NCBI RefSeq assembly: GCF_039654945.1
Contig: NW_027361671.1
Coordinates: 91,512,001 to 91,576,000, forward strand
Reading direction: 5' to 3'
Length of the DNA stretch: 64,000 nucleotides
Source: Dendrobates tinctorius
Taxonomy: Eukaryota
In this document: piece by piece, positions 14,778 to 62,055 of the stretch
How the letters are laid out: each line of letters opens with the position of its first letter
Numbering within the stretch: position 1 is the first letter of the stretch
Translations under genes and position numbers: made by a program
Notes under the pieces: generated by a model
The model's input: only the letters and a program-made list of their open reading frames with translations
The model's database searches: none
Told to the model about the DNA's origin: nothing

Positions 14778-15519
14778 TTAAACCATTCTCTCTGTCACTA
14801 TTCTGGCATTTGGCAAATATTAATAATTATGGTAGTCCTAATTGACCTAAAATGGGAAAGGTTTATTCTGATTTCATGTTAGATATTGAGAAAAAACATG
14901 CATATGTGTCTTTTTATATAGTAGATCGTAATAGTATATAGTATATAGCTAATTAATCCCAGGACTTCCCTTTCCCTGGTTCTGCTGGGAGGTATGTTAT
15001 GCTGCATAGTTTACCTCTCTTGGGTAGAAGTATTTTTTTGAAATTTTGTGGGATTTGATTGGTAGAACTCGGAGTGTATTTTGTGTTACACTATGGTAGT
15101 TGGTTGGTAGCACTAAGAAGGTGTTTTGTGGAATTGATTTTGCTGTGGGAGGGGGCTACTATCCACTGCATTAATCTAATTTTTGGCACTGCTAGTGTAT
15201 TTTAAGCTTCTTTCTGGTAGGTGATATTGGAATAGTTACAGGGACCCTGATTTTTGAACTGCACAGGGCTAAACTTTTTGTAATAGCTGCCTTGTCTATG
15301 TCCAGTGAACTCTCTGACTACTTCTAATATTCTTAGAGTTTTCAGTGTGGGTACACACATAATGCCATAAACTGCTCATGTTTTCCTGCAGCAGTTTGCC
15401 TTGAATCATTTTTGCAGTGAATGTCTTTTCTTGTGCCAACTAGTAATTGACTGACCTGCAGTGCTTTCTTTGTCTGCAAAGAATACTGTGTCCCAGCTAA
15501 TGTACAATTATACTATATA

Positions 15520-16081
15520 CAGTTAGGTCCATATATATTTGGACAAAGACAACATTTTTCTAATTTTGGTTCTAGACATTACCACAATGAATTTTAAACA
15601 AAACAATGGCCAAGTCAGTCACCTGATCTCAACCCAATTGAGCATGCATTTCACTTGTTAAAGACTAAACTTCAGACAGAAAGGCCCACAAACAAACAGC
15701 AACTGAAAACCACCGCAGTGAAGGCCTGGCAGAGCATCAAAAATGAGGAAACACAGCATCTGGTGATGTCCATGAGTTCAAGACTTCAGGCAGTCATTGC
15801 CAACAAAGGGTTTTCAACCAAGTACTAGAAATTAACATTTTATTTACAATTATTTAATCTGTCCAATTACTTTTGGTCCCTTTAAAAACAGGGTAGCACA
15901 TGTTAAGGAGCTGAAACTCCTAAACCCTTCATCCAATTTTAATGTGGATACCCTCAAATGAAAGCTGAAAGTCTGTACTTCAACTGCATCTGAATTGTTT
16001 TGTTTAAAATTCATTGTGGTAATGTCTAGAACCAAAATTAGAAAAGTGTTGTCTCTGTCCAAATATATATGGACCTAACTG
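15520..16081 (+). mobile_element. Internally deleted Tc1 element
   Basis: TIRs CAGTTAGGTCCATATATATTTGG at both ends, TA TSD, SPDLNPIEH coding remnant; same family as the copy at 61158. Confidence 0.85.
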
Positions 16082-16111
16082 TATCATATAGTATACTGTA
16101 CAGTATATCAT

Positions 16112-16285
16112 TTAGCATATTTCCCAGAGGAGCATTGCGGCTTTAAGTCTCCTCATCTTGACATGCTTAGCATGTCATTCTCCGCAAGGAGAAATTATAC
16201 GTCTTGGATATCGGTCAGACGCCTCTCTCATAGCCAAACCAGATCTCACACTTTGCACTGATGAAGGGCAAAGTTTCCTGAATAC
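16112..16285 (+). ncRNA. Satellite-2/retrozyme-like unit, 5' part (promoter motifs and hammerhead 5' half)
   Basis: Ends in CCAGATCTCACACTTTGCA-CTGATGA-AGGG-CAAAGTT-TCCT-GAA; 16112-16212 is repeated at 21717-21817. Confidence 0.75.
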
Positions 16286-16635
16286 CTTGAGTGCTGTCTC
16301 TTGGCCTTCCTGCATCGCCACTTCAGTGGTAAGCCAGTCGCTGCTTTTGGGAGATAGCCAGGAGGATTCGGGGAGGAGATCCTTGGAACTGTGGACAATG
16401 GGAGTCCGACTTCAATTCTCTGGGACCGGTGATAGCCGGGTCAAAAATGGATTCAGGATTGACATCGCTGAAGATAAGAAGTTGTATTTTTCTCTGGGAT
16501 ATTTGGTCAACATGGTGTTTTATAACAAATATATCGTGGCACTACTGCGTTGGTGCACAAAAGAAGGTTCCCACACCAGTATAGTTAATGAACAAAAAAT
16601 TTTGGCACTCAACTTGTTGCAAAGTGAAGGTTTTA

Positions 16636-16700
16636 TTTGCAGTCTCAAATGTTTAGACGTTTCGGCTTATACAATCAAGCCTTCATCAGTAAGCTGCAAA
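16636..16700 (-). ncRNA. Minimal type I hammerhead ribozyme (inverted copy)
   Basis: Reverse complement of 16964-17028. Confidence 0.8.
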
Positions 16701-16963
16701 TCAGATACAAGTGTACAACACAAGTCAGATGCTACATAATGTACAGTCAAACAGAATAACATCCAATGTATACCAAAACAAATTTATAATAGTGCAATAG
16801 TGATGGAAGGGATGGGTTGAGGTAAAGGGGAATGGGGAAGGGAAAAAGAAAAAAGCCTATAGGAAAAAAGGAAAGTGAAAAAAAAAAGGAAAGTGAAAAA
16901 AAAGGAAAGTGAAAAAAAAAAAAGGAAAGTGAAAGAAAAAGGATGTTGTACACTTGTATCTGA

Positions 16964-17028
16964 TTTGCAGCTTACTGATGAAGGCTTGATTGTATAAGCC
17001 GAAACGTCTAAACATTTGAGACTGCAAA
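16964..17028 (+). ncRNA. Minimal type I hammerhead ribozyme (PLE-type)
   Basis: TTTGCAG-CTTA-CTGATGA-AGGCTT-loop-AAGCC-GAAAC-GTC^TAA...CTGCAAA. Confidence 0.8.
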
Positions 17029-18242
17029 TAAAACCTTCACTTTGCAACAAGTTGAGTGCCAAAATTTTTTGTTCATTAACATGGTGTTTTATGACATCCT
17101 GAAGATTCGGAAGTCTGATATAATATGCCTGCAGGAGTTTAGGAGGGAAGGCAGGTATGTACTGGTGCTATCTTCTATGGCGGCTTGCCAGAATTTGTTT
17201 ACTGCCCTGAAAAATGGAGTTGCAAATCCTTTGCTGGAAGGTCTTACCTTTACTGTGCTGTACTCTAAGGGAGATATCCCTCTTGTAGTTTTCATGCACA
17301 ACCCTTTTGTTTCCCTGGAGGACATTACTTTATTTTTGAAAAGACATTGCATTTATGTTCAGTACTCCCACAGGGTCCTGAATGAAGAAGGGCTCTGGAC
17401 TGGAAAGTACAATTTTTTTGTGAGATTTGGGATGGATCCCCAAGGTCCGGGAGGCATCCATTACACCCCCCTCTTAATTTTTCAATTGGGAAAAATAGTG
17501 GGTTTTTGTTCTTTCCAGATGTCCCTATGTATTGCAGGAGGTGTAAAAATTTCGGGCATACCCACAGATAGTTGCAAGGAGATGCCAACTTGCAGGAATT
17601 GCAGTGCTTCTGGCATATGGCAAAAGACTGCACAAATCCAGTTATGTATAATGCTTGTGGTGAGGAGGGCCATAAGTATTGGGACTGTAAGGCCAGGATC
17701 AGTCCTAGGTCTTACGCTGAGGTCTCAGGTGGGGCAGCTGCGCCCCCTGCTTCTGTTGTTGACATTCCACAGGTTTCAGACCCGGATCTTATTGAGGAAC
17801 CTGAAATCATGGATGCACATGAGGAGACCCTGCCCCAAATGGAGTCTCCCATCCCAGAGGTCGCAGTTTTGGAACTTGCCGATGTTGAATGTGAGCTCCC
17901 TCATCAGTCTGATGTCTGTGGGGAGGGGGAGTTGGAGTGTACTCTTGGCAATACCCCCAGTGTATCTTGGTTCGCTACTGAGGAGGAGTTGGCCAGTTGT
18001 GTAGATCAAGGTGACTTCACTCTTGCAAGGTCCTCTGAGGATGAGGAGCCTGGAACTTCCTGTAAGAAGCCCAGAACTGATTGGGCAGACCCCGGTGAAG
18101 TTGGTTTAAGTCCGGTGAGTGAACGTAGTTACCCTCAGAATGTCTTCTCTCCTGACACCAATGCTTTTTTAGGCATTCCCGAAGACGTAAACAGATTCAG
18201 AGAGTTGCAGTTCCAGATGGAAGATGAAAACGGCTGATATTA

Positions 18243-21200
18243 ATGGGTAACAGGGAGATTAGTTTAGATAGCTACACGGTGGTAGAGGTGGGTAGATGTA
18301 TAGTTGCACATGTTAGCTATAAGGGGTGGCGGGCTAGAATTATTAATGTGTACTGTCCATCAGGGCACGACAGGAAAAAGGAGCATCTGGCTCTTTTGGA
18401 AAAATTAAGTTTGTTTCTTCCGGGCAAAATGCCTACAGTTTAAGTTGGAGACTTTAATTCCGTTACAGAAGGGAATTGTGACATAACTGGAAAAAGTTAT
18501 CCAATCTTATTTCTGATTTTTCCCTTCTAGATGCTGCTGCTCTGAAATTTGGCATCCCACCACCGCCAACGTACCATGCTGATAGGGATGGTATTGCATC
18601 CAGGATAGATAAAAAATTTTCCAAAAATATGTTGTGTATGAATTTTGAACAAAATGCTGTACCTTTTTCTGATCATGAGTGTTTGAGAGGTGTGTTTAGT
18701 GCAATTGATGGCCGTGTGTATGGGGGTGGGGTTTGGAAGCTGAATGTAAGATTGTTAGAAGATGAGGATGTGATGAATGAATTAAAAATAAAGTATAAAG
18801 AGTGGAGAGTATGTAAGAGGGACTTTGTGTGTGTGCTGGAATGGTGGGACTGGGTTAAGGCGTGTTGCAAAAAATTCTTCAAAAAATGGGGCTATAAAAA
18901 AACTGCTATTTATCAGAGTAAATTTAATGATTTAAACAGGCATTTAGACTGGTTAAGAAGTGTGGAGAAAGTGGGATGGATGCGTCTGATCTGCTAGCTG
19001 AGACAAAGAGTGAATTAAAGAGTGTTATGGATGAAAAAGGTAAAGAAATCATCTATCGCACCAAAATAGAACATCAAAGTGCACAAGGTTCTTTTTTAAG
19101 ATAATGAATGGGAGAAAGGTTGATATGGATAAAATCCTGGATAGGAACGGTTTGTATGTGTCAGGTGAGAATGTGATAAAGGAGGTGAATAGGTTCTATA
19201 GCAAGTTATATGATAAAAAATGGATTGATTCAGGTCTTGTTTCAGAAGTGCTGAATGGGGTAGAGAACAAGTTGGATAGTGGAGAATGTGATATTTTGAA
19301 TGAGGATGTAATTATGGAAGAAGTAGAAAACGTGATGAAGAGTGCTATAAAGAATAAGACACCAGGTAAAGACGGATTGCCGGTAGAATTCTATGTGAAG
19401 GCATGGGATTTTCTGGGTGCTGATTTGACTGAGATATGTAAGTATATGTGGGAGAGTGGTAAGTTGTGTGAATCAAGTGAAAGAGGGGATGGTTGTGCCT
19501 GTGCATAAGAAAGGTGAGAGAAAGTGTTTAGAGAATTGGAGACCTATAACATTGTTGAATGCAGATTACAAAATCTACAGCGAATTGTTGGCGAATCGTA
19601 TGCGTGAGGTGATTGGTAGTATTGTGGATGAGGATCAAGTGTGTGCTGTGCCTGGAAGAAGTATGAGTGATAACTTATTGTTATTAAGGGATTTGATTGG
19701 AGACTGCATGGGAAGGAAACAGAAGTGTATGGTTCTGTCAATTGATTTTGAGAAAGCATTTGATAGGGTCTCGCATGTGTTTTTGTTTAAAGTTCTGGAG
19801 AGAATGGGATCTCCTCAAAAATTTGTGAATGGGATAATGTCTTTGTATGATTGTGTGTCAAATTAGTTTCTTGTTAATGGGTGGTTGAGTGAGAAAGTGA
19901 ATATTAAGTCTGTTGTAAGGCAGGGGTGTCCCCTGTCCCCTGTCTTGTTTGTATATGTGATTGAACCTTTGTTGTGCTTGGTGAGACGTGATAATATGAT
20001 GCGAGGTTTGTTGGTACCTGGGAGTGGTGGAAAGCATGTGAAAGTTCTTGGATATATGGATGATGTTGTGGCTGTGAGTGAAAGTGTTGCGTCTAGTAGG
20101 GTTAAGTTGCTTCTGGAGTTTTTCTGTGGTGCATCTGGCTTTAGAGTGAATTGGAATAAATGAGTTTTAAATGTTTTGGGGATAACAGGGTTAAAATGGA
20201 GGGGGTAAAGTGTGAGGAGGGTGCTATCAAAGTGCTGGGAGTATTATTTAATAAGGACTTGGAAGGTAAGGAGAGCTGGGAGGAGTGTGGATTGCACATA
20301 GAGCGTAAGTTGAATTTTTTGCAACTCTCAGACTTCACCTTGAGTGATAAGATTTTGGTCATAAAAGTGGTGATTCTTCCGATTTTGCTTTTTATTGCAA
20401 CAGTTTTTCCACCGTCGTGTAGGAAAATAAAGAGTGGAAAAGTTAGTTTTTACTTTTTTTCTGGAGCAGTAAAATAGAGAAACTTAAGAGAGAAAGTCTT
20501 TTTAAGGCGTGTCACCATGGTGGCTTGGCCTTTCCAAACATTGAGATTTTTCTGGGGCTTCAGTATAGCAAAACTGTTGTTATTTTGCTGAATAAAGGAA
20601 ATAAGTGAGCATATATGGCAAGTTATTCTGCTGGTTGGATGTTATATGGCTTATGTCGGAGAAAGAGGGATTCTAGAATGCCTATTGCTTTCAAGTGTCC
20701 GGTCTGGTCTGAGGTGATGGAGAAGTTTGAGGAAGCATGATTTGCTGAGTGTACCGATGAATGATTTTAGAATGGCTAAGAATGTGATGAAAATAATACG
20801 AATAAATAGAATGATGTGGAATGTAATATTGTGGGGTTGAGAGGGAATGAAATTTTGGTTGCATGGAAGAGTATGGGAACGCACGGGATGTCTAATAGAC
20901 AAAGGGATATTGTATGAATGTCCTTGCACAATATTTTGCCTGTGCGTCAGGTTCAGAAGAGACGAAATCTGACCAGAACTGATGTGTGCCCGAGGGAAGG
21001 ATGTGGTGGATGTGAGACTGTGTGGCATACTATGTGGGACTGTGATTACACGTGCAGTGTGTGGAAGTGTGTAGGTGGGTTGTGTAAGGAGTTAGCAAGT
21101 GTGAGTTTTATTGACTGGCGTGTTGCGATGTTTGGAATTGGTGCATGTGGTCGTGTGAAAAATAGAATCCTATAGTTAATTATGACTTGTGTGATGCAGA

Positions 21201-21385
21201 GTTTGTGGAATGGGAGGAATTTAGGAATTTTCAAAGAGAAGCATGCATCTGTGAATAAGTGTGTCGGGCTGATCCTTTCTAGATTATACTTGATTTATAA
21301 ATTAGACAGCGAAGGCGGTGGTGGTTCTGATGCAGAGGGTGTCTGCAAATTTAAAAAATGGCAGCACCTGATCAAATATCAGTGA
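18243..21385 (+). pseudogene. Tx1 ORF2 (APE endonuclease, reverse transcriptase, zf-RVT), with stops and frameshifts
   Basis: GDFN, SDH, KTPGKDGLPVEFY, WRPITLLNADYK, DFEKAFDRV, RQGCPLSP, YMDD, CPREGCGGCETVWHTMWDC; endonuclease N-terminus appears deleted. Confidence 0.9.
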
Positions 21386-21557
21386 ATTTTAGTGATGTTT
21401 ATTGATGTTTAGGATGTCTTTTGTGTATACCCTTGGTTTGCTATACTAAAATAAATATGAACCATGATGATGAGAGCTGAAACAACGACGTTTAAGTTGA
21501 TGAGCTTATATTGAGTTGCTTATAACTAACCTGAATGGTTTAAAAAAAAAAAAGAAA

Positions 21558-21817
21558 GAAACACAGTGTCTGCAAATTGAGATTCTGGCTGGCTTTTATC
21601 CTAAGTCATGTAACAAGGCTCGTTAAAGGGTCGACATTGACTTTTAGGATTGCTACTTCCAATAGGTGGCACTAGAGTTCTAGTCCTCTTCCTCTCTGAA
21701 GAGATAATTTGCATAATTAGCGTATTTCCCAGAGGAGCATTGCGGCTTTAAGTCTCCTCATCTCGACATGCTTAGCATGTCATTCTCCGCAAGGAGAAAT
21801 TATACTTCTTGGATATC
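21558..21817 (+). ncRNA. Satellite-2/retrozyme-like unit, 3' part (hammerhead 3' half and promoter of the next unit)
   Basis: GAAACACAGT-GTC^TGCAAATTGAGATTCTGG pairs with the 16239-16257 stem I; followed by CTCF-like, octamer, SPH-like and PSE-like motifs. Confidence 0.75.
21659..21803 (+). promoter_or_regulatory. snRNA-type promoter module
   Basis: CCAATAGGTGGCACTA (CTCF-like, 21659), ATTTGCAT octamer (21707-21714), TTCCCAGAGGAGCATTGCG (Staf/ZNF143 SPH-like, ~21726), TCTCCGCAAGGAGAAAT (PSE-like, ~21784). Confidence 0.55.
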
Positions 21818-22030
21818 CTGAAAGATAAAAGAAACGCTTGAGCATGCAACATTAACTATAACAGTTGTAAGTCCAGTGTTCTGGTTGGTAGCCTGGAGTC
21901 CACAACAGTAGAATCATCCATATCCGATTGGAAACCCATCTTTGAATTGGGGAAGCTGCAACATGCAAACACTTCCACCAACCCATCAATCCAATGGTGA
22001 AAGTTCCATGTCCTAACGCAGCTGGAGGTA

Positions 22031-23158
22031 CCGTATTTTTCGGTCTATAAGACGCACCGGACCATAAGACGCACCCCAATTTTCAGAAGGAAAATAGGGA
22101 AAAATATAATGTGTCAAATGAGGGTCCGTCTTACAATCCGAATTCAGCTTACCTGGGAAGGGATCCGGCACAGGTGGAGGAGTGGTCACAGGGGTCATTC
22201 AGTGGTCCAGGCTCGTGCGGTGGCGGCAGGTTGGTTGTACTGGAGCAGCTGGGCTGTGCTGGGGCAGCTGGGCTGGGCTGTGCTGGGGCAGGTGGGCTGT
22301 GCTGGGGCAGCTGGGCTGTGGCAGCTGTGCTGGGGCAGCTGTGCTGGGGCTGGGGCAGCTGGGCTGGGCTGGCGCAGCTGTGCTGGGGCTGGGGCAGCTG
22401 TGCTGGGGCTGGGGCAGCTGGGCTGTGCTGGGGCTGGGGCAGCTGGGCTGTGCTGGGGCAGCTGGGCTGTGCTGGGGCTGCTGGGCTGTGCTGGGGCAGC
22501 TGGGTTGTGCTGGAGCAGCTGGGCTAGCTGTGCTGTGCTGGGGCTGGGGCAGGTGGGCTCTGTGGGGTGAGGGTGGCAGCTCTCTGTGCTCCGGTGCAGG
22601 GGCGGTGGATCCGCCGGCATTTCCTCCAAGCCCGGAGGCCCCCGCACATCCCTTGCTGGCCGCCGCCATGTTGCGGTGGCCTCCGGGAACATGGACGCCG
22701 GGAAGATGGCCGCCGGTCCGGGGACGGCGCATGCGCTGGTTTAGATCTCATCCCGAGATCTCGGGGGACGAGATTCAAATCTCGGCAACGAGATCTCGTC
22801 CCCCCGAGATCTCAGGATGAGATCTGAACCTGCGCATGCGCCGTCCCCGGACCGGCGTCCATCTTCCCGGCGTCCATGTTCCCGGAGACCACCGCAACAT
22901 GGCAGTGGCCAGCAAGGGACGTGCGGGGGGCCTCCGGGCTTGGAGGAAATGCCGGCGGAGCCGCCACCCCTGCACCGGAGCACAGAGATCCGATACCCCT
23001 GCACCGGAGTACAGCCCGCTGCCACCACCGCACTACAGAGCCCCCGCGGCACCTGCACCAGCCTCGAAGGTTAGTACATTGCGACCATAAGATGCACCCC
23101 CCACTTTCCCCCAAAATTTTGGGGAAAAAAAGTGCGTATTATGGTCCGAAAAATACGG
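22031..23158. mobile_element. Tc1/mariner-superfamily MITE
   Basis: TIRs CCGTATTTTTCGG(T)C(T)ATAA, TA TSD; internal GC-rich minisatellite 22245-22550 and palindrome 22581-22988. Confidence 0.85.
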
Positions 23159-37462: not shown

Positions 37463-37591
37463 NNNNNNNNNNNNNNNNNNNNNNNNNNNNNNNNNNNNNN
37501 NNNNNNNNNNNNNNNNNNNNNNNNNNNNNNNNNNNNNNNNNNNNNNNNNNNNNNNNNNNNNNNNNNNNNNNNNNNNNNNNNNNNNNNNNNN
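37463..37591. other. Assembly gap (N run)
   Basis: Run of N. Confidence 1.
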
Positions 37592-60289: not shown

Positions 60290-61155
60290 AATGTCCCTCA
60301 GACTAGTCGAACATCTACATGCAAAAAAGAGGACCCGTTGCCACGATTTCCGATGTCACACCATCTTTTTCAAACATGTGCCAATTTTTTCCGGATTATA
60401 GACCGAATGCTATTGTCCATAGGACCAAATTTAAAGCTGAAAACAAATCTTTTCTCTTTTTTCCGCTTGTTTTTTTGTTGATCCAGACAGAGACTACCAT
60501 TTAAAGGGTTCTGCGAAATATTAACCGTTCTACCCAAGGCTAAATCTAAGGTCGATTTAGGATATCCTCTGTTTTGGAATCTTTGATAAAGATCCAAAGA
60601 TTGATTTTTAAAACTCTCAACTGCTATTAATTCTCTTGAGTCTCATAAATTGGCTGTACGGTAACAATTGTTTAGCGTAATAAGCATGAGCAATATTAAA
60701 ATATAAGAGGGCATTGCTTGAGGACGGTTTGCGGTAAACCACAGTGACAAAAATTCCAATGAAGATCCCCCAAATTTGGATATAAATTTCATATTCATAT
60801 CATTGGAACGGTTCAGGTGCTCCACAAAATTCGTGAAGGTCTCCTCAGAACTGTCCCACACCATGAAGACATCGTCCACAAATTGTAAATAAAGTTTTAT
60901 GTGTTTCAAATATTCGTTCCTTGAAGAATATACATATCTTTCCTCAAAAACTGCGAGGAATAAATTTGCAAAAGTACATGGCACTAGGGTCCCCATCACG
61001 GTACCCATCCTTTGTATATACCCTGTATCACCAAATTTAAAGGCATTGTGTTCAAGTATGAATTGCAGACCTTCGCCCACAAAATTTACAAAATCTAATC
61101 CCTTTTTTGTATTAATCAAGATTTATCTAATATCCTCCACTCCTTCCTTTTGTGG
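60290..61155 (-). pseudogene. Penelope RT fragment (pLTR remnant extends to ~58460)
   Basis: ILEHNAFKF, GTVMGT, FANLFL, FVDDVF and RFQNRGYP motifs. Confidence 0.8.
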
Positions 61156-61157
61156 TA

Positions 61158-62055
61158 CAGTTAGGTCCATATATATTTGGACAGAGACAACATTTTTCTA
61201 ATTTTGGTTCTAGACATTACCACAATGAATTTTAAACAAAACAATTCAGATGCTGTTGAAGTTCAGACTTTCAGCTTTCATTTGAGGGTATCCGCATTAA
61301 AATTGGATGAAGGGTTTAGGAGTTTCAGCTCCTTAACATGTGCCACCCTGTTTTTAAAGGGACCAAAAGTAATTGGACAATTGACTCCAAGGCTATTTCA
61401 TGGACAGGTGTGGGCAGTCCATTTGTTATGTCATTCTCAATTAAGCAGATAAAAGGCCTGGAGTTAATTTGAGGTGTGGTGCTTGCATTTGGAAGGTTTT
61501 GCTGTGAAGGAAACACGCGGTCAAAGGAGCTCTCCATGCAGGTGAAACAAGCCATCCTTAAGTTACAAAAACAGAAAAAACCCATCCGAGAAATTGCTAC
61601 AACATTAGGAGTGGCAAAATCTACAGTTTGGTACATCCTGAGAAAGAAAGAAAGCACTGGTAAACTCATCAATGCAAAAAGACCTGGGCGCCCACGGAAG
61701 ACAACAGTGGTGGATGATCGCAGAATAGTCTCCCATGGTGAAGAGAAACCCCTTCACAACAGCCAACCAAGTGAACAACACTCTCCAGGAGGTAGGCATA
61801 TCAATATCCAAATCTACCATAAAGAGAAGACTGCATGAAAGTAAATACAGAGGGTTCACTGCACGGTGCAAGCCACTCATAAGCATCAAGAATAAAAAGG
61901 CTAGACTGGACTTTGTTAAGAAACCTCTAAAAAAGCCAGCACAGTTCTTGAAGAACATTCTTTGGACAGATGAAACCAAGATCAACCTCTACCAGAATGA
62001 TGGAAAGAGAAAAGTATGGCGAAGGCATGGTACAGCTCATGATCCAAAGCATACC
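61158..62055 (+). mobile_element. Tc1 element, 3'-truncated
   Basis: TA-CAGTTAGGTCC TIR; GRPRKTT and WTDETKIN transposase motifs. Confidence 0.85.

What the first reader, a model, noticed from the sequence alone, without database searches (positions are those of the whole stretch)
16239..21588. Tx1 LINE inserted precisely into the catalytic core of a retrozyme hammerhead ribozyme
Seen: removing the LINE (16286-21557) rebuilds a complete type I hammerhead, TTTGCA-CTGATGA-AGGG(CAAAGTT)TCCT-GAAAC-ACAGT-GTC^TGCAAA, with an extended stem I (CCAGATCTCA/TGAGATTCTGG). The junction is at the conserved GAAA, with a short imperfect duplication (GAATAC left, GAAACAC right). Established: Tx1-clade LINEs are often target-specific for multicopy small-RNA genes or repeats (Keno-U2 snRNA, Mutsu-5S, Dewa/Kibi-tRNA spacers, Tx1L-Tx1D). 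Inference: this may be a Tx1 family that targets hammerhead retrozymes. The insertion would destroy self-cleavage and place the LINE just downstream of an snRNA-type promoter. The LINE could be a parasite of the retrozyme or its mobilising partner. I do not recall such a target being described, but this is one locus.
Basis: partly seen in the sequence, partly recalled or inferred. Interest (0 to 1): 0.88.

Follow-up and report, generated by a model that had tools for sequence, protein, structure and literature searches.

The report
LINE inserted in a hammerhead retrozyme
An old, broken L1/Tx1-type retrotransposon really does sit inside the catalytic core of a hammerhead-ribozyme repeat in this frog genome, but this repeat is so abundant that one such hit is expected by chance, and I could not test whether the whole LINE family aims at this site.

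Summary
Removing 16286-21557 rejoins a 333-nt retrozyme unit and rebuilds a complete type I hammerhead. It has CUGAUGA, a 4-bp stem II, GAA|A, a 2-bp palindromic stem III of the amphibian dimeric kind, GUC^, and a long stem I. Contigs from four public runs show uninterrupted copies of the same repeat.

The insert is a poly(A)-ended L1-superfamily LINE with an RRM/CCHC ORF1, which fits Tx1. Its RT fragment is about equally distant from Xenopus Tx1 (33%) and mammalian L1 (31-35%). This copy is dead: it has at least 8 frame breaks, an internal deletion, and a younger nested hairpin insertion that carries a minimal Penelope-type hammerhead.

The idea of a hammerhead-targeting Tx1 family could not be tested. 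No other copy with flanks could be retrieved, and the read tool masked the poly(A) junction.

Most of the available evidence favours coincidence:
- The retrozyme has tens of thousands of copies and the LINE hundreds.
- The unit has only six A-runs, three of them inside the ribozyme.
- The LINE ends share no sequence with the retrozyme.
- A 13-nt match is private to this copy.

One ambiguous hint points the other way: one of two sampled 31-mers at the 5' junction is multi-copy across species.

Verdict: a real but probably ordinary nested insertion, with about a 27% chance of a true target preference.

The parts
16112..16285 (+). Left part of a 333-nt non-LTR retrozyme unit. The element starts at about 16110-16112.
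   Evidence: 16112-16212 is repeated at 21717-21817 with 97% identity. Summed word depth is 1e5-4e5 in four runs.
16239..16282 (+). 5' half of the type I hammerhead: stem I 5' strand, CUGAUGA (16258-16264), stem II hairpin AGGG/TCCT, and G12 A13 A14.
16283..16285 (+). TAC at the 5' junction. It could be untemplated letters, the start of the LINE, or a mutated duplication.
   Evidence: Uninterrupted copies read ...GAAAC... here (table 5c).
16286..21557 (+). Degenerate L1/Tx1-type LINE in the same orientation as the ribozyme. The 5' end is uncertain (16280-16286).
   Evidence: ORF1 and RT domains. tblastn maps relatives across 16398-21334 in shifting frames. Family word depth is about 2-6 thousand in three of four runs, flat from 5' to 3'.
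16399..18237 (+). ORF1 remnant (RBD_ZCCHC3_2nd fold plus CCHC knuckle). It is interrupted by the nested insertion and by a frameshift near 17600.
   Evidence: PF23058 at E = 3e-16. zf-CCHC is weak. It is 55-65% identical to a 420-aa Ranitomeya imitator protein.
16524..17077 (+). Younger nested 554-nt hairpin insertion with a 15-nt duplication AACATGGTGTTTTAT (16509-16523 and 17078-17092). Its arms are 137 nt and 100% complementary (16584-16720 and 16944-17080), and the loop is A-rich. Each arm carries a minimal Penelope-type hammerhead (CTGATGA at 16975 on +, and at 16683-16689 on the minus strand; GAAACGTC follows).
   Evidence: Other LINE copies lack it, shown by loose ends at 16527 and 17078.
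18243..21385 (+). ORF2 remnants: part of the endonuclease domain, RT, and a C-terminal zinc-binding region. There are at least 8 frame breaks or stops, and the N-terminal ~50 residues of the endonuclease domain are missing, with a rearrangement at about 18236.
   Evidence: RVT_1 at 19456-19866 and 19885-20163. tblastn. Loose ends at 18236 in X1 and X7, and indels against the family. The best PDB match is human L1 ORF2p.
21386..21557 (+). 3' UTR, A12 tail (21542-21553) and GAAA (21554-21557).
21558..21588 (+). 3' half of the hammerhead: GAAAC, stem III/loop ACAGU, GUC with the cleavage site after 21570, and the stem I 3' strand.
21589..21823 (+). Rest of the retrozyme unit (to 21716, including the octamer ATTTGCAT at 21707-21714) and a partial second unit (21717-21823).

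Best explanation
This is an ordinary nested transposon insertion. A 1.3-unit hammerhead retrozyme landed here first. Later one copy of a high-copy L1/Tx1-type LINE integrated into it by target-primed reverse transcription, priming its poly(A) on the short T-run opposite the GAAA of the ribozyme core. That left little or no target duplication. The insertion separates G12-A14 from A15.1 by 5.3 kb, so this ribozyme copy can no longer fold; this step is inferred. The LINE copy then decayed and itself received a younger hairpin insertion. The position in the catalytic core most likely reflects two things: the great abundance of this repeat, and the fact that half of its few A-runs lie inside the ribozyme. 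It does not require recognition of the ribozyme. Shown: the anatomy, the order of events, the copy numbers, and the decay. Inferred: the priming site and the lack of targeting.
For: - The split hammerhead and the continuous 333-nt unit are read directly.
- Uninterrupted retrozymes appear in four runs (tables 5 and 5c).
- Retrozyme word depth is 1e5-8e5. The LINE is about 2-6 thousand in three of four runs (about 100-600 in X11), and low-copy contigs are 4-9. That implies tens of thousands of retrozyme units and hundreds of LINE copies.
- 141 of this genome's scan notes mention hammerheads, across 193 windows. The repeat therefore covers roughly 0.5-1% of the sequence, and some LINE-in-retrozyme events are expected by chance.
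- The unit has only six AAA sites, and three of them (GCAAAG, GAAAC, GCAAAT) are inside the hammerhead.
- The LINE 5' and 3' ends show no significant similarity to the retrozyme. 463 of 500 and 52 of 500 shuffles score as high.
- The 13-nt match GTGTCTGCAAATT at 21339 is private to this copy, because the family reads G at 21346 (table 3).
- One contig in run X7 joins retrozyme position 21716 to LINE position 17405. That is a LINE/retrozyme adjacency at a different place (table 5c).
- No other note in this genome pairs a LINE with a hammerhead.
Against: - No flank of any other copy was seen, so targeting is not excluded.
- One of the two sampled 31-mers in 16256-16316 is held by many runs, including small ones, from at least four organism labels. 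That word is therefore multi-copy. 30 of the 31 possible words include 16283-16286, so it may be a junction shared by the family rather than a LINE-only word.
- The LINE is in sense orientation and has a very short 5' UTR (113 nt). Its family shows no 5'-truncation gradient (table 2). These traits are common in co-transcribed, target-specific LINEs.
- Other first-stage notes place Tx1-type elements of this genome inside tandem repeats. I did not check these notes.
Confidence: 0.6

Rival explanations
1. The LINE belongs to a Tx1 lineage whose endonuclease, or whose co-transcript annealing, prefers the hammerhead core of this retrozyme family. Most copies would then sit at the same GAA|A position, in sense orientation, and could be read through from the retrozyme promoter.
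For: - Tx1 lineages that target U2 genes, microsatellites and other transposons (Tx1D, Mariner-N4_AMi, LTR elements) are established (PMC4494074).
- The ORF1 is of the Tx1 type.
- The LINE is in sense orientation with a 113-nt 5' UTR, and the reading frame is open from 16158 across the junction into ORF1.
- Family depth is flat from 5' to 3'.
- A multi-copy 31-mer lies within 16256-16316.
- No paper in the library describes such a target.
Against: - This is a single locus.
- The multi-copy word may lie wholly inside the LINE if the element starts at 16280-16283.
- The retrozyme region next to the junction is the most variable part of the repeat: alignments of other copies break at 16261-16272.
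- The LINE carries no target-derived sequence at either end.
- The RT fragment does not separate Tx1 from L1.
Confidence: 0.27
2. The LINE is the autonomous partner that mobilises the retrozyme, and the junction is a by-product of that relationship.
For: The 2020 retrozyme paper leaves LINEs open as possible mobilisers (PMC7229834).
Against: - The two elements share no 3' tail or head.
- The retrozyme has no poly(A).
- The junction is 12 nt away from the ribozyme cleavage site, so it is not at an RNA end.
- A 2026 preprint links vertebrate retrozymes to Penelope-like elements by distribution and by sequence.
- Relative abundance differs among species. In X11 the LINE is about 10-20 times rarer while the retrozyme is commoner.
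Confidence: 0.03
3. The arrangement is a chimeric cDNA (template switch from LINE RNA to retrozyme RNA) or an assembly misjoin, not an insertion into an existing retrozyme.
For: L1-type reverse transcriptases can make small-RNA/LINE chimeras. The perfect 137-nt inverted repeat inside the LINE could raise doubts about the assembly.
Against: - The two retrozyme parts fit together to the nucleotide into one 333-nt unit in phase with the next unit. A template switch would not reproduce that.
- The inverted repeat has its own 15-nt target duplication, and its empty site is seen in other copies.
- The only N run is at 37463-37591, far from this locus.
Confidence: 0.04

Closest known systems
Amphibian non-LTR retrozymes / newt satellite 2 type I hammerheads (Cervera and de la Pena 2020, PMC7229834)
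   Same: The unit is about 330 nt and is very abundant. It carries a type I hammerhead with a very short, palindromic stem III, as expected for motifs that act as dimers. It occurs in partial tandem arrangement.
   Different: This copy is interrupted inside the catalytic core by a 5.3-kb LINE. Stem II closes with A-U where G-C is usual. Cleavage and circular RNA were not tested.
Target-specific Tx1-clade LINEs: Tx1L in Tx1D, Keno in U2 genes, Kibi/Koshi in microsatellites, Tx1-Mar in Mariner-N4_AMi (Kojima 2015, PMC4494074)
   Same: The element is an L1-superfamily LINE with an RRM/CCHC ORF1. It sits inside another multicopy element, in sense orientation.
   Different: Those families are defined by many copies at one target position. 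Here only one copy was seen. A hammerhead or retrozyme target appears in no paper of the library searched.
Penelope-like elements with minimal hammerheads (Cervera and de la Pena 2014; bioRxiv 10.64898/2026.07.22.740005)
   Same: The nested 554-nt hairpin insertion carries CUGAUGA...GAAACGUC motifs with almost no stem III. This is the Penelope type.
   Different: It is a non-coding hairpin with an A-rich loop, not a full element. It concerns the nested insertion, not the LINE itself.

Membership tests
Hammerhead ribozyme, type I | Conserved core C3-A9 (CUGAUGA), G12-A14, A15.1-U16.1 and C17 at the cleavage site | tested here: met
   All positions are present once 16283-21560 is removed.
Hammerhead ribozyme, type I | Three helices around the core, with stem I open | tested here: met
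   Stem I is 6 bp, an internal loop, then 10 bp with one bulge. Stem II is 4 bp. Stem III is 2 bp (ACACAGUGU is palindromic). A two-strand cofold was also run.
Hammerhead ribozyme, type I | Score above the Rfam gathering threshold | not testable with these tools
The interrupted locus gives no match.
Hammerhead ribozyme, type I | Self-cleavage | not testable with these tools
   This needs in vitro transcription of an uninterrupted copy.
Non-LTR retrozyme | Unit of about 170-400 nt with a hammerhead, in tandem or partial tandem, at high copy number | tested here: met
   The unit is 333 nt and 1.3 units are present. Word depth is 1e5-8e5 and uninterrupted copies are seen in four runs.
Non-LTR retrozyme | Expressed as linear and circular RNA | not tested
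   No RNA reads were laid.
L1 superfamily LINE | Endonuclease and RT in ORF2, and a poly(A) tail | tested here: met
   RVT_1 matches. The best solved-structure match is human L1 ORF2p at 5e-16, against R2 at 3e-10. tblastn covers residues 53-1135 of relatives. The tail is A12.
Tx1 clade | Type I ORF1 (RNA-binding domain plus CCHC knuckle) rather than Transposase_22 | tested here: met
   PF23058 at E = 3e-16. CCHC is weak. The literature links this ORF1 type to Tx1 in non-mammalian animals (PMC5203782).
Tx1 clade | RT groups with Tx1 in a phylogeny | tested here: inconclusive
   The top Swiss-Prot structural hit is the Xenopus Tx1 149 kDa protein, but at 33% identity against 31-35% for mammalian L1. 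No named reference set was available for a tree.
Target-specific Tx1 lineage | Most copies inserted at one position of one target sequence | tested here: inconclusive
   No other copy with flanks was retrieved. One ambiguous multi-copy junction-region 31-mer was found.

The most novel reading that the evidence does not exclude
A frog Tx1-type LINE lineage of several hundred copies integrates specifically at the GAA|A of the hammerhead core of an abundant retrozyme. It would inactivate the ribozyme and might ride on the retrozyme's transcription. That would be the first retrotransposon known to target a self-cleaving ribozyme element.
Probability: 0.27. Interest if true: 0.7.

Novelty: already known. 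Interest (0 to 1): 0.33.

Why it matters
If the insertion is a coincidence, it is a tidy example of layered transposon history (retrozyme, then LINE, then a Penelope-type hairpin) and nothing more. If the LINE family as a whole proves to aim at the ribozyme core, it would add a new kind of target to the Tx1 repertoire. It would also show an autonomous element parasitising, and disabling, a non-autonomous circular-RNA element. One BLAST of the LINE termini against the full assembly would answer the question.

Tried and rejected
- Rfam on the whole window and on both junction regions found no hammerhead match. This is expected for a split motif and for minimal Penelope-type motifs.
- No other copy of the LINE or of either hammerhead half lies in the 64-kb window.
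- Three protein word searches were run: ORF1, a frame spanning the 5' junction, and the last ORF2 piece. They found only one 59%-identical Ranitomeya protein, whose DNA could not be fetched.
- The exhaustive RT search gave relatives of at most 54% identity, from assorted animals. The nearest one (L003/L004) is about 65% identical in DNA and shows no clear poly(A) and no CTGATGA motif.
- A metagenome scan for the LINE 3' end gave two chance 22-mers.
- Read laying gave copy numbers, uninterrupted retrozymes and the private mutations of this copy. It masked 21536-21568, and almost no contig runs on into unlike flank, so there was no flank test.
- I considered whether the LINE 3' region carries a piece of the hammerhead (13-nt match at 21339). 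I rejected this because the match is private to this copy.
- I considered whether the LINE termini are derived from the retrozyme. I rejected this on alignments against shuffles.
- The Swiss-Prot fold search could not separate Tx1 from L1.
- The scan's own notes, searched by sequence, were blank.
Full report
**What is there**

The left flank reads ...CCAGATCTCACACTTTGCA CTGATGA AGGGCAAAGTTTCCT GAA TAC, followed by the insert. The right flank reads ...GGTTT A12 GAAA, then GAAACACAGTGTC TGCAAATTGAGATTCTGG.

Joining 16282 to 21561 gives a 72-nt type I hammerhead with these parts:
- Stem I has 6 bp, an internal loop, and 10 bp with one bulge.
- The core is CUGAUGA.
- Stem II has 4 bp and closes with A-U.
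- G12-A14 and A15.1 are present.
- Stem III has only 2 bp inside the palindrome ACACAGUGU.
- GUC is present, with the cleavage site after 21570.

The joined sequence folds at -20.1 kcal/mol, z = -2.5. The short palindromic stem III matches the amphibian motifs that act as dimers (PMC7229834).

Each half is unique in the window, and zero matches are expected by chance. The flanks belong to one repeat. 16112-16212 recurs at 21717-21817 with 97% identity, spaced 5605 nt apart, which is 333 nt plus the 5272-nt insert. The locus is therefore a 1.3-unit retrozyme (about 16112-16285 plus 21558-21823) split by the insert. Contigs from four public runs join 16261-16272 to 21590 and beyond, with letters such as GAACCATGAAACACTGTCTGTAAAT between (tables 5 and 5c). 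These are uninterrupted relatives, and they read GAAAC where this locus is broken.

**The insert**

ORF1 (16399-18237) matches the ZCCHC3-type RNA-binding domain (E = 3e-16) and has a weak CCHC knuckle. It is 55-65% identical to a 420-aa Ranitomeya imitator protein. RT matches lie at 19456-20163. Full-length relatives align from 18237 to 21334 in shifting frames. The best solved-structure match is human L1 ORF2p, at 5e-16 against 3e-10 for R2. The top Swiss-Prot structural hit is the Xenopus Tx1 149 kDa protein, but at 33% identity against 31-35% for mammalian L1. The element therefore belongs to the L1 superfamily and has a Tx1-type ORF1 (PMC5203782). RT-level membership in Tx1 remains open.

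The copy is dead. It has at least eight frame breaks or stops. The first ~50 residues of the endonuclease domain are missing, with a rearrangement at about 18236 where other copies read differently. It also carries many private substitutions and indels.

**A nested, younger insertion**

16524-17077 is a 554-nt hairpin. It has a 15-nt target duplication (AACATGGTGTTTTAT), 137-nt arms that are 100% complementary, and an A-rich loop. Each arm holds a minimal hammerhead, CUGAUGA...GAAACGUC, of the Penelope type. Other copies of the LINE lack it (loose ends at 16527 and 17078). Its loop has depth about 430 in run X1 and nearly none in X7 and X11. The order of events is retrozyme, then LINE, then hairpin.

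**Abundance**

Summed word depth is 1e5-8e5 over the retrozyme. It is about 2-6 thousand over the LINE in X1, X7 and X16, and a few hundred in X11. Low-copy contigs have depth 4-9. These depths are rough. They imply tens of thousands of retrozyme units and hundreds of LINE copies, with no 5'-truncation gradient. The scan's notes mention hammerheads 141 times in 193 windows of this genome.

A repeat that fills roughly 0.5-1% of the genome will receive some LINE insertions by chance. Within the unit there are only six AAA sites, three of them inside the hammerhead. A poly(A)-primed insertion that lands in the unit therefore has about a one-in-two chance of hitting the ribozyme and a one-in-six chance of hitting GAAAC.

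**The targeting idea**

I could not obtain the flank of any other copy:
- Protein searches found no member of the family, and the exhaustive search stopped at 54% identity.
- The closest contigs are a different family.
- The Ranitomeya locus could not be fetched.
- The metagenome hits were chance matches.
- Read laying masked the poly(A) junction, and its contigs do not run on into unlike flank.

Evidence against a special relationship:
- The LINE ends show no significant similarity to the retrozyme.
- The 13-nt match at 21339 disappears in the family consensus, which reads G at 21346.
- One X7 contig joins retrozyme position 21716 to LINE position 17405, a different place (table 5c).

Evidence for targeting:
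- The LINE is in sense orientation.
- Its 5' UTR is only 113 nt.
- The frame is open from 16158 into ORF1.
- Family depth is flat from 5' to 3'.
- One of two sampled 31-mers in 16256-16316 is held by many runs, including small ones, under at least four organism labels.

That word is multi-copy. It may span a family-wide junction. It may instead lie wholly within the LINE if the element begins at 16280-16283, which is the reading that needs no mutations in the supposed duplication. I treat it as a modest factor of about three in favour of targeting, not as a test.

**Literature**

Tx1 lineages with target preference, including preference for other transposons, are established (PMC4494074). No paper in the library pairs Tx1 with hammerheads. 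Vertebrate retrozymes are currently tied to Penelope-like elements (bioRxiv 10.64898/2026.07.22.740005). The 2020 paper left LINEs open as possible mobilisers.

The snRNA-type promoter was not verified here. The only ATTTGCAT octamer (21707-21714) lies downstream of the LINE, and the unit upstream of the LINE begins at 16112 without one.

**Verdict**

The most likely explanation is an ordinary nested insertion at an A-run of a very abundant repeat (0.6). A hammerhead-preferring Tx1 lineage remains possible (about 0.27) and can be settled with a single search of the full assembly. The partner, chimera and artefact readings are unlikely.

Noticed in passing
window 16524-17077: A 554-nt hairpin insertion nested inside the LINE. 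It has a 15-nt target duplication, perfect 137-nt inverted arms that each carry a minimal Penelope-type hammerhead (CTGATGA...GAAACGTC), and an A-rich GGAAAGTGAAAAAAAA-like loop. It is far younger than its host. The loop sequence is present in run X1 and nearly absent from X7 and X11.
   Followed up: partly
window 16158-16739 (+): The reading frame of LINE ORF1 is open for about 80 codons upstream of its ATG (16399), running through the 5' UTR and across the junction into the retrozyme. Roughly a 2% chance event. The meaning is unknown.
   Followed up: no
window 15517-16084: Inverted repeat with 91-nt arms (98% complementary, 386 nt apart) just upstream of the retrozyme. A related 37-nt piece lies at 61153-61189. 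Probably another hairpin or MITE-like element.
   Followed up: no
window 22219-22569 and 22571-23043: A G-rich minisatellite (GCTGGGGCAGCTGTG-like units of 14-25 nt), followed by a GC-rich palindrome with arms 22639-22767 and 22801-22929 (94% complementary).
   Followed up: no
window 21707-21714: A perfect octamer ATTTGCAT at the end of the retrozyme unit. It fits the snRNA-type promoter reported for newt satellite 2. That attribution is from my memory and was not checked here. The octamer is absent upstream of the unit that holds the LINE.
   Followed up: partly
run X7, joint 21716 to 17405: A contig of another species joins the end of a retrozyme unit, through CCGGG, to position 17405 of this LINE family. 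This is a second LINE/retrozyme adjacency at a different position.
   Followed up: no
window 16261-16285 and 21558-21589: Across other retrozyme copies, the hammerhead stem II/loop 2 and stem III region is the most variable part of the unit. Alignments break at 16261-16272 and resume at 21590.
   Followed up: no
window 37463-37591: The only run of N in the window (129 letters). I left it untouched.
   Followed up: no
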